In this document: piece by piece, positions 17,344 through 19,218 of the stretch
Position numbering within the stretch: the first letter of the stretch is position 1
How the letters are laid out: the number at the start of each line of letters is the position of its first letter
From: Octopus bimaculoides
Lineage: Eukaryota
Length of the DNA: 63,106 nucleotides
Reading direction: 5' to 3'
Assembly: GCF_001194135.2 (NCBI RefSeq)
Contig: NC_068994.1
Coordinates: 46,273,043-46,336,148 of the forward strand
Notes under the pieces: generated by a model
Databases searched by the model: none
What the model was told of the DNA's origin: nothing
Seen by the model: the letters and a program-made list of their open reading frames with translations, nothing else
Made by a program: the position numbers and the translations under genes

Positions 17344-19218
17344 ATGGCTACCAGAAGGAAAAGCATATCGAAAAAGGATAAAAAGGACAAAACGCTAACC
17401 GAGCAGCCTGAACTTGAAGCCGTCAGACCGGATATGTTAACTCACCGGAAATCGACGAGAATGGAAATGAAAACCAGCGAATCGAAAATGAAAGAAGAAT
17501 TCAGTCTTGTATTGACACCAACTGTGAAGCCAGAGTATGACAATCTGGTTCGTTTCGACTTCAAAACGTCACAATATGCTGAGGTACCATTTTTAGACCA
17601 AGTTATCATTTTGACGTTGCTGCAAGGTAGTTTGATCCATAAAGATATGGTAGAAGGTCCCAAAATAAAGACAGACGTTCCAGTTTTACCTCTACTAGAA
17701 GAAGTGGAGCAGGAAATGTTTACAGAGCACATTTTTTATAAGAAATTGGTGAATGCTTTTAATTATGGTGATCGAGGATCCCAAACCTACAACTACAGAG
17801 CTCGTGAGCAGGGCACCCTGACGGATCCGCCGCCAAAATCGACGTTTTCGGCTAATGTTAATCAATGGGAAATTTACGACTCTTATATAAGAGATTCCAA
17901 AAAACACGAAACGGAGAGGAAAAAGCCACCAGTCAGCAGCAGTTTCTTGGATTCTAAAACAGCTATTATGATGATGGAAAGAATGGTGAATCAGAATATT
18001 TTCGATGAGATCACAAATGATTACAGATATTACGAAGATGAATCCGATGAATTTCACGTTAGCTATGGTACCATGCTACCTCTTTGGAAGTTTTCCTACC
18101 ACAAAACCCTGGGTTTCAGTGTAACGTCCTTATGTTGGAACAACCGTTATTCGGATTTCTTTGCTGCCTCCTTCGGCTCCTACAATGTGTTTCAGCAAAG
18201 ATTCGGCGGCTGGCTGCTGTTGTACAGCTTGAAAAACCCGTCGTATCCGATGTACATATTTCAAACAAACAGCAGCGTTATGGCTTTAGACTTCCATCCC
18301 GAATTCGCTTACTACATTTGTGTCGGGCTTTACAACGGTCATGTTGCCGTGTATAATCTTTGCAAGAGCCATGATGCTTTAGTTCAGAAATCCTCCAGTT
18401 TCACAGGGAAGCACCACTACGAGGTGACTGAAGTAAAATGGCAACCAAAAACCGAAGACGTGGATTTAATTTTCTGCTCGGTGTCTACCGACGGAAGGAT
18501 CTTGCAATGGAGCCTCGTCAAAGAGGAACTAGTCCAACTGGAATTGTTGAAACTTGAAATAGATCCGCTCCCTTTCTGGGACAGTAATATATCAATCTTG
18601 TCGTTCGGTTGCGGTAGCTCGTTCAATTTCCATCGCAAGTTTGATCATTTGTATTTGCTCGCCACGCAAACGGGCAAAGTTCACGTCTGCTCAAAAAGAT
18701 ACTGTAATGAAGTCTTGTACACGCTGGATGCCCATTCTATGGGCGTGAATAAAGTTGAATGGAACCACTTCCATCCAAATACATTCATTACTTGCAGCGA
18801 CGACTGGAGCGTAAAAGTATGGGAATACAACGAGGAATACAAAATCCCTTTGTTCACGTTCGATCTGGGCAGCAGAGTGACTGATGTCGCCTGGGCTCCA
18901 TATTCGGCCAGTGTGTTCGCTGCCGCTACGTCGAAAGGTCGTGTCCTCGTGTACGATTTAAACTTAAACCGCTACGAACCGATGTGTGAACAAGTGGTGG
19001 TGAAGAAGAAAGACACTGAGGTTACCCGGATAGCTTTCAACCCTCAAAATTTCAGCATCATTGCCGGGGACAGCAGAGGAGATGTCACCGGCCTGAAACT
19101 GTCCTCTAACCTTCGCAAAATGCCGAAATTGAGGAAAGGAGATCCACCTCTTGAAGGACCAGCGAAGGAGGCAGCAGAGACAGCTAAACTGGACAGGATA
19201 TTCTCAATGGCCAGATAA
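17344..19218 (+). CDS. DNAI1: Axonemal outer-arm dynein intermediate chain (DNAI1/IC78-like, WD40 repeat), single exon
   Basis: Uninterrupted 624-aa ORF with DNAI1 hallmark motifs: NQWEIYDSY, MERMVNQN, YYEDESDE, LPLWKF, YSLKNPSYP, SVSTDGRI..W, CS.DWSVKVW, DVAWAPYS.SVFAA, LKLSSNLRK, KLD.I. Confidence 0.93.
   Translation: MATRRKSISKKDKKDKTLTEQPELEAVRPDMLTHRKSTRMEMKTSESKMKEEFSLVLTPTVKPEYDNLVRFDFKTSQYAEVPFLDQVIILTLLQGSLIHKDMVEGPKIKTDVPVLPLLEEVEQEMFTEHIFYKKLVNAFNYGDRGSQTYNYRAREQGTLTDPPPKSTFSANVNQWEIYDSYIRDSKKHETERKKPPVSSSFLDSKTAIMMMERMVNQNIFDEITNDYRYYEDESDEFHVSYGTMLPLWKFSYHKTLGFSVTSLCWNNRYSDFFAASFGSYNVFQQRFGGWLLLYSLKNPSYPMYIFQTNSSVMALDFHPEFAYYICVGLYNGHVAVYNLCKSHDALVQKSSSFTGKHHYEVTEVKWQPKTEDVDLIFCSVSTDGRILQWSLVKEELVQLELLKLEIDPLPFWDSNISILSFGCGSSFNFHRKFDHLYLLATQTGKVHVCSKRYCNEVLYTLDAHSMGVNKVEWNHFHPNTFITCSDDWSVKVWEYNEEYKIPLFTFDLGSRVTDVAWAPYSASVFAAATSKGRVLVYDLNLNRYEPMCEQVVVKKKDTEVTRIAFNPQNFSIIAGDSRGDVTGLKLSSNLRKMPKLRKGDPPLEGPAKEAAETAKLDRIFSMAR

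What the first reader, a model, noticed from the sequence alone, without database searches (positions are those of the whole stretch)
17344..19218. Intronless, intact but fast-evolving DNAI1-like gene: probable functional retrogene
Seen: a 1875-bp uninterrupted ORF covers the whole protein, in a genome otherwise full of large repeat-filled introns; no poly(A) or TSD remains. Established: animal DNAI1 genes are multi-exon (about 20 exons in human). Inference: an old retrocopy kept under purifying selection, possibly a sperm- or cilia-specialised outer-arm dynein subunit.
Basis: partly seen in the sequence, partly recalled or inferred. Interest (0 to 1): 0.7.

Follow-up and report, generated by a model that had tools for sequence, protein, structure and literature searches.

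The report
Octopod-specific intronless DNAI1 retrogene
This octopus gene is a single-exon copy of the ciliary/flagellar motor subunit DNAI1, made long ago from a spliced mRNA of a 22-exon parent gene, kept intact in several octopods but evolving about four times faster than its parent; it is a clear though not extraordinary example of a functional retrogene whose tissue of action is still unknown.

Summary
Window 17344-19218 (+) is an uninterrupted 624-codon ORF and the only long real ORF in the 63 kb. It encodes a DNAI1 / IC78-type outer-arm dynein intermediate chain (E 4e-158 to mammalian DNAI1; modelled propeller matches human DNAI1 at TM 0.90).

The window is Octopus bimaculoides chromosome 14. 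The genome holds one other DNAI1 locus, on chromosome 2, with about 22 coding exons over 88 kb and 45% protein identity.

Single-exon orthologues occur in O. sinensis and O. vulgaris (syntenic), in another octopodid, and as three copies in Argonauta hians. None was found in decapodiforms.

The intronless genes form one clade (100/100) on a very long stem inside cephalopods. They share coleoid-specific but no octopod-specific derived residues.

On the same 378 codons, dN/dS is 0.22-0.34 against 0.09 for the parent, with dN 4.3-fold higher (p = 5e-4). Full-length omega is 0.16-0.44, far below 1. The CDS has no indels, while the flanks have many.

About 27% of positions invariant in canonical DNAI1 are replaced, many identically in all copies.

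The retrogene reading is supported. Sperm or cilia specialisation is untested because no expression data were reachable. Verdict: a new member of a known kind, of moderate interest.

The parts
17344..19218 (+). Single-exon CDS (624 codons plus TAA) of a DNAI1-type outer-arm dynein intermediate chain (protein P0001).
   Evidence: ORF. Best PDB sequence matches are mammalian DNAI1 (9fqr_Gn 3.8e-158, 8j07_m1 1.1e-156). Foldseek top hits are DNAI1 chains with TM 0.89-0.90. No indel against O. sinensis over 1875 bp.
17344..18039 (+). N-terminal third (residues 1-232): extended, low-confidence region. It keeps the two conserved IC1 N-terminal blocks (about residues 48-100 and 133-182) but has shortened linkers, and it evolves fastest.
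   Evidence: pLDDT below 50. Deletions of about 28, 45 and 20 aa relative to the parent. Omega 0.52-0.80 for residues 1-200 against 0.17-0.25 for the rest, O. bimaculoides vs O. vulgaris.
18061..19113 (+). WD40 beta-propeller (about residues 240-590).
   Evidence: pLDDT mostly 85-95 with about 28 strands. WD40 / beta-propeller Pfam hits. Rmsd 3.0 A over 420 columns to human DNAI1 8j07_s1.
17323..17343 (+). Proximal 5' leader with a conserved ...AGTGTAACA|ATG context (A at -3, G at +4 in this species) and an in-frame stop 7 codons upstream of the ATG.
   Evidence: the motif is shared by O. bimaculoides, O. sinensis, O. vulgaris and the Logan octopodid.
16677..19747 (+). Block collinear with the O. 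sinensis and O. vulgaris orthologous loci (gene plus 667 bp upstream and 529 bp downstream), bounded by SINE-like repeats.
   Evidence: one 3.1-kb blastn HSP in each species, with further collinear blocks at 11908-12447, 14009-15713 and 21342-22521; flanks are 90-91% identical with 133 gap columns.
19222..19300 (+). (ATC)n/(AAC)n trinucleotide microsatellite starting 4 nt after the stop codon. No poly(A) tail is present.
   Evidence: A similar (CAY)n tract follows the stop of Argonauta P0002 and P0003. Whether it descends from an old A-rich tail is speculation.

Best explanation
The gene is a functional retrogene of DNAI1, which encodes the IC1/IC78 intermediate chain of the axonemal outer dynein arm.

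Origin. A spliced mRNA of the multi-exon DNAI1 gene (now on O. bimaculoides chromosome 2) was reverse-transcribed and inserted at an unlinked site (now chromosome 14). This happened in a cephalopod ancestor, before Octopus and Argonauta split, and probably near the base of the octopod or coleoid lineage.

Early history. The copy acquired expression. It then went through a long phase of rapid change: a stem of about 2.75 substitutions per site, shortened N-terminal linkers, and replacement of about a quarter of the otherwise invariant DNAI1 positions.

Since then. It has been held under purifying selection that is 2-4 times weaker than on the parent. In Argonauta it duplicated further, to three copies.

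Inferred function. The protein keeps the DNAI1 propeller and both conserved N-terminal blocks. The most likely mechanism is that it still pairs with IC2 (DNAI2) and the light chains at the base of an outer-arm dynein, as an alternative IC1 subunit that gives a subset of axonemes a modified arm. Sperm flagella are the leading guess.

What is shown and what is inferred. Shown: identity, intron loss, the existence of the parent, age, constraint, rate, and an intact fold. Inferred: retroposition as the mechanism (no poly(A) or TSD survives), incorporation into the outer arm, and the tissue of action.
For: Identity:
- DNAI1 is the best match by sequence and by fold (TM 0.90 and rmsd 3.0 A to human DNAI1).

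Parent and copy number:
- The parent has about 22 coding exons over 88 kb on another chromosome, and these two are the only DNAI1 loci in the genome.
- The parent is also multi-exon in O. vulgaris (91 kb) and Argonauta (33 kb).

Distribution and orthology:
- All seven orthologous or co-orthologous copies in five species are single-exon.
- Flanks are collinear between Octopus species.
- No annotated host gene lies within 10 kb either side in O. sinensis or O. vulgaris.

Phylogeny:
- The intronless clade has 100/100 support and nests in cephalopods at 99/97.
- It shares 7 of 23 coleoid-derived residues and 0 of 10 octopod-derived residues.

Constraint:
- Full-length omega is 0.30/0.44 (NG86/YN00; p = 6e-10) against O. 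vulgaris and 0.16/0.22 (p = 1e-32) against a more distant octopodid.
- Omega between the Argonauta paralogues P0002 and P0003 is 0.35-0.45.
- Codon positions 1/2/3 are 94.4/95.4/91.2% identical, against 90-91% in the flanks. The CDS has zero gap columns against 133 in 1.2 kb of flanks.

Acceleration:
- On the same 378 codons, non-synonymous differences are 25.5 against 6 (p = 4.8e-4) and omega is 0.22-0.34 against 0.09.
- The copies retain 71-74% of 172 invariant DNAI1 columns, against 96-100% for canonical sequences. Many replacements are identical in all six copies.
Against: - No hallmark of retroposition survives (no poly(A), no TSD), so the mechanism rests only on the complete absence of about 21 introns plus the unlinked location.
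- No transcript, protein or tissue data were found. The Logan contigs that carry an orthologue look like genomic unitigs bounded by repeats.
- No polyadenylation signal lies within 950 bp downstream, so the transcript structure is unknown.
- Placement of the clade is weakly resolved: three alternative positions have p-AU of only 0.029-0.035, and the 2.75 stem invites long-branch artefacts.
- Loss of about 27% of invariant positions could mean that the protein no longer works in the outer arm.
- Orthology of the Argonauta copies rests on the tree alone, because their flanks align with the window only in repeats.
Confidence: 0.85

Rival explanations
1. A DNA-level (segmental or translocated) duplicate of DNAI1 that later lost all of its introns, not a one-step retroposition.
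For: No poly(A) or TSD remains to prove retroposition. The copy is old enough for much to have happened.
Against: All of about 21 coding-region introns are missing in every one of seven copies in five species, and no intermediate with some introns was found. No flanking parental sequence or neighbouring gene came along, and the locus is on another chromosome. Wholesale precise intron loss itself usually works through a cDNA intermediate (established knowledge).
Confidence: 0.05
2. A retropseudogene, or a non-functional relic, whose open frame is kept by chance or by recent origin.
For: Elevated dN; omega up to 0.5-0.8 in the N-terminal 200 codons in the closest species pair; no expression evidence found; nucleotide identity of the CDS is only a little above that of the flanks.
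Against: Intact frames of 622-625 codons in five species, including Argonauta at saturated dS. Omega significantly below 1 (p 6e-10 to 1e-32). Zero indels in the CDS against 133 gap columns in 1.2 kb of flanks, and a 1,2 > 3 codon-position pattern. Confident propeller fold. Substitutions fixed on the stem have since been conserved in all copies.
Confidence: 0.02
3. A functional retrogene that has left the outer dynein arm: a neofunctionalised WD40 scaffold with a new partner set, for example in another dynein, in dynein pre-assembly, or outside the axoneme.
For: A stem of 2.75 substitutions per site. 26-29% of universally invariant DNAI1 positions replaced, many fixed in all copies (e.g. R55L, P62K, H90L, W362T, E443T, K559E). 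Shortened N-terminal linkers, the region that carries the light-chain and IC2 contacts in canonical ICs (plus established knowledge of IC/LC towers).
Against: Both conserved N-terminal blocks and the whole propeller are retained, and DNAI1 remains far the best match by sequence and by fold. 71-74% of invariant positions are still kept. There is no gain of any new domain.
Confidence: 0.12

Closest known systems
Canonical DNAI1 (human DNAI1; Chlamydomonas IC1/IC78; sea-urchin 'IC2, ciliary'), including the octopus parent gene on chromosome 2
   Same: Same family and architecture: an extended N-terminus with two conserved blocks plus a C-terminal WD40 propeller. Best hits by sequence (E 1e-156 to 4e-158) and by fold (TM 0.89-0.90).
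   Different: Single exon against about 22 exons (about 20 in human, from my own knowledge). About 75-115 aa shorter because linkers were deleted. Only 45% identical to its own parent. Replaces 26-29% of positions invariant across bilaterian DNAI1s. Evolves about 4 times faster.
Drosophila melanogaster Sdic (sperm-specific dynein intermediate chain), a young lineage-specific gene derived from a dynein IC gene (my own knowledge: Nurminsky et al. 1998)
   Same: A lineage-restricted, rapidly evolving extra dynein intermediate-chain gene with further local duplication (three copies in Argonauta, two of them head to head). It works like a model for what this gene might be.
   Different: Sdic arose by DNA duplication and fusion of the cytoplasmic IC gene with AnnX, not by retroposition of an axonemal IC. 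It is very young, whereas this gene predates the Octopus-Argonauta split. Sperm specificity is shown for Sdic and untested here.
Testis-biased functional retrogenes of animals (e.g. mammalian Pgk2 and other 'out of the testis' retrogenes; my own knowledge)
   Same: An intronless copy of a multi-exon housekeeping or structural parent at an unlinked site, with an intact ORF, omega below 1 but above the parent's, and accelerated early evolution.
   Different: Expression pattern unknown here. Retroposition hallmarks are fully eroded. Functional retrogenes have scarcely been described in cephalopods; my literature searches found none for DNAI1.
Teleost dnai1 paralogues (dnai1.1 / dnai1.2; 'paralog 2' appears among the hits, P0118)
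   Same: A second DNAI1-type gene kept alongside the canonical one in a lineage.
   Different: The teleost paralogues are intron-containing duplicates (my own knowledge) and remain typical DNAI1 in sequence. The octopod copy is processed and strongly divergent.

Membership tests
DNAI1 / IC78-type outer-arm dynein intermediate chain | Closest homologues are DNAI1/IC78, not DNAI2/IC70, the inner-arm ICs (DNAI3/4, IC138/IC140) or cytoplasmic dynein ICs | tested here: met
   DNAI1 scores 526-531 bits, protist IC78-type 334-378, DNAI4 170, DNAI2 78, cytoplasmic IC 78; the protein nests among animal DNAI1 proteins.
DNAI1 / IC78-type outer-arm dynein intermediate chain | C-terminal WD40 beta-propeller of the dynein-IC type | tested here: met
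   residues ~240-590 have pLDDT 85-95. TM 0.90, rmsd 3.0 A over 420 columns to human DNAI1 (8j07_s1), and TM 0.89 to bovine sperm DNAI1 (9fqr_Gn).
DNAI1 / IC78-type outer-arm dynein intermediate chain | Conserved N-terminal blocks of IC1 (the ELKEEF...NIVRF block and the KLTNQFNF...PPP...QWEIYD block) | tested here: met
   both blocks are present (KMKEEFSLVLT...NLVRFDF and KLVNAFNYGDRGSQTYN...PPPKSTFSANVNQWEIYD), though with substitutions at otherwise invariant positions and shortened linkers.
DNAI1 / IC78-type outer-arm dynein intermediate chain | Retention of residues invariant across the family | tested here: inconclusive
   71-74% of 172 invariant columns are kept, against 96-100% for canonical members (87% for Schistosoma). 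This is enough for homology and fold, but not enough to assume unchanged interactions.
DNAI1 / IC78-type outer-arm dynein intermediate chain | Physical incorporation into the outer dynein arm with IC2 (DNAI2), light chains and heavy chains | not testable with these tools
   Needs axoneme proteomics, co-immunoprecipitation or cryo-EM.
Functional retrogene (processed gene copy) | Lacks all introns of a multi-exon parent present in the same genome | tested here: met
   (single exon). (parent with about 22 coding exons over 88 kb on C2).
Functional retrogene (processed gene copy) | Located at a site unlinked to the parent, without parental flanking sequence | tested here: met
   C14 against C2; no neighbouring or host gene within 10 kb in O. 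sinensis or O. vulgaris. In O. vulgaris the copy is on OX597827.1 and the parent on OX597815.1.
Functional retrogene (processed gene copy) | Poly(A) remnant and target-site duplication. These are hallmarks of recent insertions and are expected to erode in old ones. | tested here: inconclusive
   none detectable, only an (ATC)n/(AAC)n microsatellite after the stop. Their absence is uninformative at this age (dS to Argonauta is saturated).
Functional retrogene (processed gene copy) | Intact ORF maintained by purifying selection across species | tested here: met
   seven intact copies in five species, omega 0.16-0.44, p(omega=1) 6e-10 to 1e-32; no indels in the CDS.
Functional retrogene (processed gene copy) | Transcribed and translated | not testable with these tools
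   No RNA-seq or proteome access, and literature searches were empty.

The most novel reading that the evidence does not exclude
The retrogene encodes a sperm-flagellum-specific IC1 that, after a burst of adaptive change, builds a lineage-specific outer dynein arm in octopods. That would be an independent, retroposition-based parallel to Drosophila Sdic. Its repeated duplication in Argonauta (dwarf males, detachable hectocotylus) would then reflect sexual selection on sperm motility. A corollary is that it arose before the octopod-decapodiform split and was lost in squids and cuttlefish.
Probability: 0.3. Interest if true: 0.55.

Novelty: new member of a known kind. Interest (0 to 1): 0.4.

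Why it matters
Axonemal dynein subunits are among the most conserved proteins of eukaryotes. A second, strongly remodelled IC1 kept across at least the Octopus-Argonauta divergence shows that the base of the outer arm can be re-engineered in a lineage.

It gives a concrete candidate for tissue-specific (sperm against epithelial or sensory cilia) dynein composition in cephalopods. It is also a well-documented case of a functional retrogene in a group where retrogenes have hardly been catalogued.

The set of stem substitutions that have since been frozen marks positions that may tune IC1 contacts. They could be mapped onto the available axoneme cryo-EM structures.

It is not a new kind of biology. 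The gene is already present in public annotations under a generic name ('dynein intermediate chain 2, ciliary-like').

Tried and rejected
1. A first dN/dS for the parent came out at 0.26-0.43, which suggested no rate difference. This was an artefact of alternative terminal exons in the two annotated isoforms (residues 709-740), plus HSP ends running into introns. Restricting to exactly mapped codons gave 0.09.

2. I hoped the 1996-bp Logan contigs (SRR11869384 and SRR11869390) were transcripts, which would prove expression. They end in a SINE-like stretch and an (ATC)n run, carry no poly(A), and no paper mentions the runs, so they are not usable as expression evidence.

3. Synteny between the Argonauta loci and the window: only dispersed repeats and a satellite align, so this was not informative.

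4. TSD search: only chance-level short repeats.

I used the parent protein instead.

6. A profile search for more members of the intronless clade found none beyond Octopus and Argonauta.

7. Literature searches for a prior description or for expression data were empty.

8. The bacterial promoter/terminator scan was not used, as it is irrelevant to an animal gene.

9. Host-gene (intronic) location was considered and rejected for O. sinensis and O. vulgaris, where no overlapping gene is called. Nothing coding was seen elsewhere in the window.
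Full report
**Observation**

ATG is at 17344 and TAA at 19216-19218, giving 624 codons with no interruption. From stop to stop it is 631 codons.

It is the only long open frame in the 63-kb window that is not an N run or a microsatellite translation. The window has 24 N runs (9,359 N), and the next longest real frames are 213 aa or less in low-complexity DNA. At about 40% G+C the chance of a random 631-codon open frame is of the order of 1e-18 (my arithmetic).

**Identity**

By sequence, the best solved relatives are mammalian DNAI1 (9fqr_Gn, E 3.8e-158; 8j07_m1, 1.1e-156). Next come the IC78/IC2-type chains of Tetrahymena, Chlamydomonas and trypanosomatids. DNAI4, DNAI2 and the cytoplasmic dynein ICs score far lower. 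Pfam sees only generic WD40 / beta-propeller models.

An AlphaFold2 model built from a 50-sequence alignment gives a confident propeller for residues ~240-590 (pLDDT mostly 85-95). The N-terminal 232 residues are disordered or extended, as expected for an intermediate chain outside its complex.

Foldseek returns DNAI1 chains of the human respiratory axoneme (TM 0.90, rmsd 3.0 A, 420 columns, 46% identity) and of the bovine sperm axoneme (TM 0.89) as top hits.

**Where the window comes from, and the parent gene**

The window is G000:C14:46,273,043-46,336,148 in a 2.34-Gb genome. The canonical protein annotated as 'dynein intermediate chain 2, ciliary isoform X1 [Octopus bimaculoides]' (P0016, 740 aa) lies on a contig of 192,492,730 bp. 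That is exactly the length of C2, so the organism is O. bimaculoides.

Six-frame searches of the whole genome with the window protein and with P0016 find only two DNAI1-type loci: the window copy, and a locus at C2:87,360,924-87,449,366 that matches exon by exon. Exon mapping recovers 19 exon-like segments, and the genome search adds three more. That makes about 22 coding exons over 88.4 kb.

The canonical gene is likewise multi-exon in O. vulgaris (90.8 kb) and in Argonauta hians (33.3 kb). The two octopus paralogues are 45% identical in protein. No further retrocopies or pseudogenes were detected.

**Distribution and gene structure of the intronless copy**

- The 90%-identity cluster of the window protein holds O. 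sinensis XP_029657034.1 (624 aa), O. vulgaris CAI9732549.1 (616 aa as annotated) and a 625-aa protein from Logan assemblies.
- The nearest other proteins are three A. hians proteins of 622-623 aa at 56-58% identity.
- I fetched the DNA of all of them. Every one is a single uninterrupted frame: 1875, 1851, 1878, 1872, 1869 and 1869 bp.
- The O. vulgaris model merely starts at an internal Met. The conserved ATG lies 24 nt upstream, in frame.
- The O. sinensis and O. vulgaris loci are collinear with the window through the gene (one 3.1-kb block, window 16677-19747) and in further blocks on both sides, so they are positional orthologues. No other gene is called within 10 kb in either species, so the copy is not inside an annotated host gene.
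- In Argonauta, two copies lie head to head 3.8 kb apart and the third is on another scaffold. Their flanks align with the window only in dispersed repeats.
- A profile of the six intronless proteins finds no further member among 5.8 billion proteins. The score falls from 1134 bits (Argonauta) to 673 bits (canonical decapodiform DNAI1, a cluster that includes Sepia pharaonis). On present sampling the gene is therefore octopod-specific. This negative is only as good as the sampling.

**Phylogeny and age**

In a maximum-likelihood tree (LG+C20 PMSF, 35 sequences) the intronless genes form one clade (100/100) on a stem of 2.75 substitutions per site.

- The clade nests inside cephalopods (99/97). 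It is drawn as sister to canonical octopod plus decapodiform DNAI1 (98/94).
- The three Argonauta copies are lineage-specific duplicates (100/99).
- AU tests disfavour three alternative placements only marginally: with octopod canonical genes p = 0.035, with decapodiform canonical genes p = 0.033, and outside molluscs p = 0.029.

Because a stem this long invites artefacts, I also counted derived residues. Of 23 columns where canonical coleoid DNAI1 differs from other molluscs and outgroups, the intronless copies carry the coleoid state in 7, the ancestral state in 6, and something else in 10. Of 10 octopod-specific derived columns they carry none (3 ancestral, 7 other). Of 6 decapodiform-specific columns they carry none.

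Both lines of evidence place the origin after cephalopods left the other molluscs and before most octopod-specific change. It is certainly before the Octopus-Argonauta split. Whether it precedes the octopod-decapodiform split remains open.

**Constraint and rate**

For the intronless gene, full length:

| Comparison | dN | dS | omega (NG86 / YN00) | Fisher p for omega = 1 |
|---|---|---|---|---|
| O. bimaculoides vs O. vulgaris | 0.0455 | 0.153 | 0.30 / 0.44 | 6e-10 |
| O. bimaculoides vs Logan octopodid | 0.058 | 0.36 | 0.16 / 0.22 | 1e-32 |

Omega between the Argonauta paralogues P0002 and P0003 is 0.35-0.45.

The N-terminal 200 codons are the least constrained: omega is 0.52-0.80 in the closest pair, against 0.17-0.25 for the remainder.

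On the same 378 aligned codons and the same species pair:

| Gene | dN | dS | omega | Non-synonymous differences |
|---|---|---|---|---|
| Parent | 0.0067 | 0.0705 | 0.09 | 6 |
| Retrocopy | 0.0289 | 0.132 | 0.22-0.34 | 25.5 |

The difference in non-synonymous counts has p = 4.8e-4.

Two earlier parent estimates of 0.26-0.43 were artefacts of alternative last exons and should be disregarded.

Between Octopus and Argonauta the parent is 88% identical in protein, and the intronless copies 56-59%.

Against O. sinensis the CDS is 93.7% identical with no gap column. The 667 bp upstream and 529 bp downstream are 90.2% and 90.9% identical, with 91 and 42 gap columns. Codon positions 1, 2 and 3 are 94.4, 95.4 and 91.2% identical. 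This is the pattern of a translated, constrained gene lying in neutrally evolving surroundings.

**What changed in the protein**

Relative to the parent, the copy lacks about 28 N-terminal residues, about 45 residues of the acidic linker after residue ~107, about 20 residues of a K/E-rich linker near residue 190, and a 24-residue C-terminal segment. It keeps both conserved N-terminal blocks and the whole propeller.

Of 172 alignment columns invariant in 26 canonical bilaterian DNAI1s, the six copies keep 71-74%. Canonical sequences tested leave-one-out keep 96-100%, and the fast-evolving Schistosoma sequence keeps 87%.

Many replacements are identical in all six copies, for example R55L, P62K, H90L, Q138A, F227Y, R238H, G311S, A352S, P360E, W362T, E443T and K559E. 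They were therefore fixed on the stem and have been conserved since. That fits a functional shift followed by renewed constraint better than ongoing decay.

**Mechanism of origin**

No poly(A) tract, polyadenylation signal or target-site duplication survives. The stop codon is followed after 3 nt by an (ATC)n/(AAC)n microsatellite and then a SINE-like element, and the upstream 600 bp is full of microsatellites. At this age that is expected.

The inference of retroposition rests on three things:
- the complete and precise absence of about 21 introns in all copies;
- the unlinked location;
- the lack of any co-duplicated neighbour.

A DNA duplicate with later wholesale intron loss cannot be formally excluded. 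It is much less parsimonious.

**Function**

Literature searches for the accession, for octopus testis or sperm data on dynein intermediate chains, for the SRA runs and for cephalopod retrogenes returned nothing relevant.

My best inference is that the product remains an IC1-type subunit at the base of an outer dynein arm, used in a subset of axonemes. Sperm flagella are the leading guess, by analogy with the testis bias of retrogenes in other animals and with Drosophila Sdic (my own knowledge).

The main functional rival is that it has left the outer arm altogether. I give that about 0.12.

**Verdict**

The gene is already in public annotation under a generic name, but I found no description of it as a retrogene. 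It is a new member of a known kind, a functional retrogene and lineage-specific DNAI1 paralogue, of moderate interest.

Noticed in passing
window 3752-3984, 16022-16244, 45698-45933, 56853-57085 (partial: 19356-19507, 25915-26042, 34685-34848): A SINE-like element of about 233 bp occurs many times in the window. It forms tandem arrays of 3-4 units in the O. sinensis and O. vulgaris flanks of the orthologous gene, and it bounds the conserved block around the retrogene.
   Followed up: no
window 4991-5103, 7343-7438, 37400-37496, 51179-51275, 56281-56375, 57778-57891, 62971-63071: A dispersed repeat of about 95 bp is 82-89% identical to copies in Argonauta hians (L015, L020). This is an old repeat family shared across octopods.
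   Followed up: no
window 22568-22626; L020 2549-3124 and 17583-17772: A 59-bp unit that is single in the window forms tandem satellite arrays near the Argonauta P0004 copy.
   Followed up: no
L015 4285-6153 (-) and 10001-11872 (+); L020 10001-11869: Argonauta hians has three intronless copies. Two are head to head 3.8 kb apart (75% aa identity, omega 0.35-0.45), and the third, more divergent, is on another scaffold. All three arose after the split from Octopus.
   Followed up: partly
L017 9977-10000: The O. vulgaris model CAI9732549.1 (616 aa) starts at an internal Met. The ATG used in O. bimaculoides and O. sinensis is present 24 nt upstream, in frame.
   Followed up: yes
L022 1-238 (-), next to the canonical DNAI1 of O. 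vulgaris: The canonical DNAI1 gene lies beside a FAM219A gene. As far as I recall the same two genes are neighbours at human 9p13.3, which would be ancient microsynteny and would confirm which octopus paralogue is the true orthologue. The human side is from memory and unchecked.
   Followed up: no
G000:C2:87,440,667-87,449,366; L022 85715-85810 vs 91639-91839: The parent gene has alternative terminal coding exons (P0016 residues 709-740 against P0127 residues 693-759) and many annotated isoforms (696-759 aa). This inflated a naive dN/dS.
   Followed up: partly
window 19222-19300; L015 downstream of 11872 and of 4285: A (CAY)n / (ATC)n trinucleotide microsatellite follows the stop codon almost at once in Octopus and in two Argonauta copies. 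It could be a much-decayed descendant of an A-rich 3' end, or coincidence in microsatellite-rich genomes.
   Followed up: no
window, 24 stretches (e.g. 8089-8611, 20174-21144, 44318-45140, 48598-49543): About 15% of the window (9,359 bases) reads N in 24 runs. These produce long spurious 'ORFs' of X in all frames, which must be filtered out of ORF lists.
   Followed up: yes
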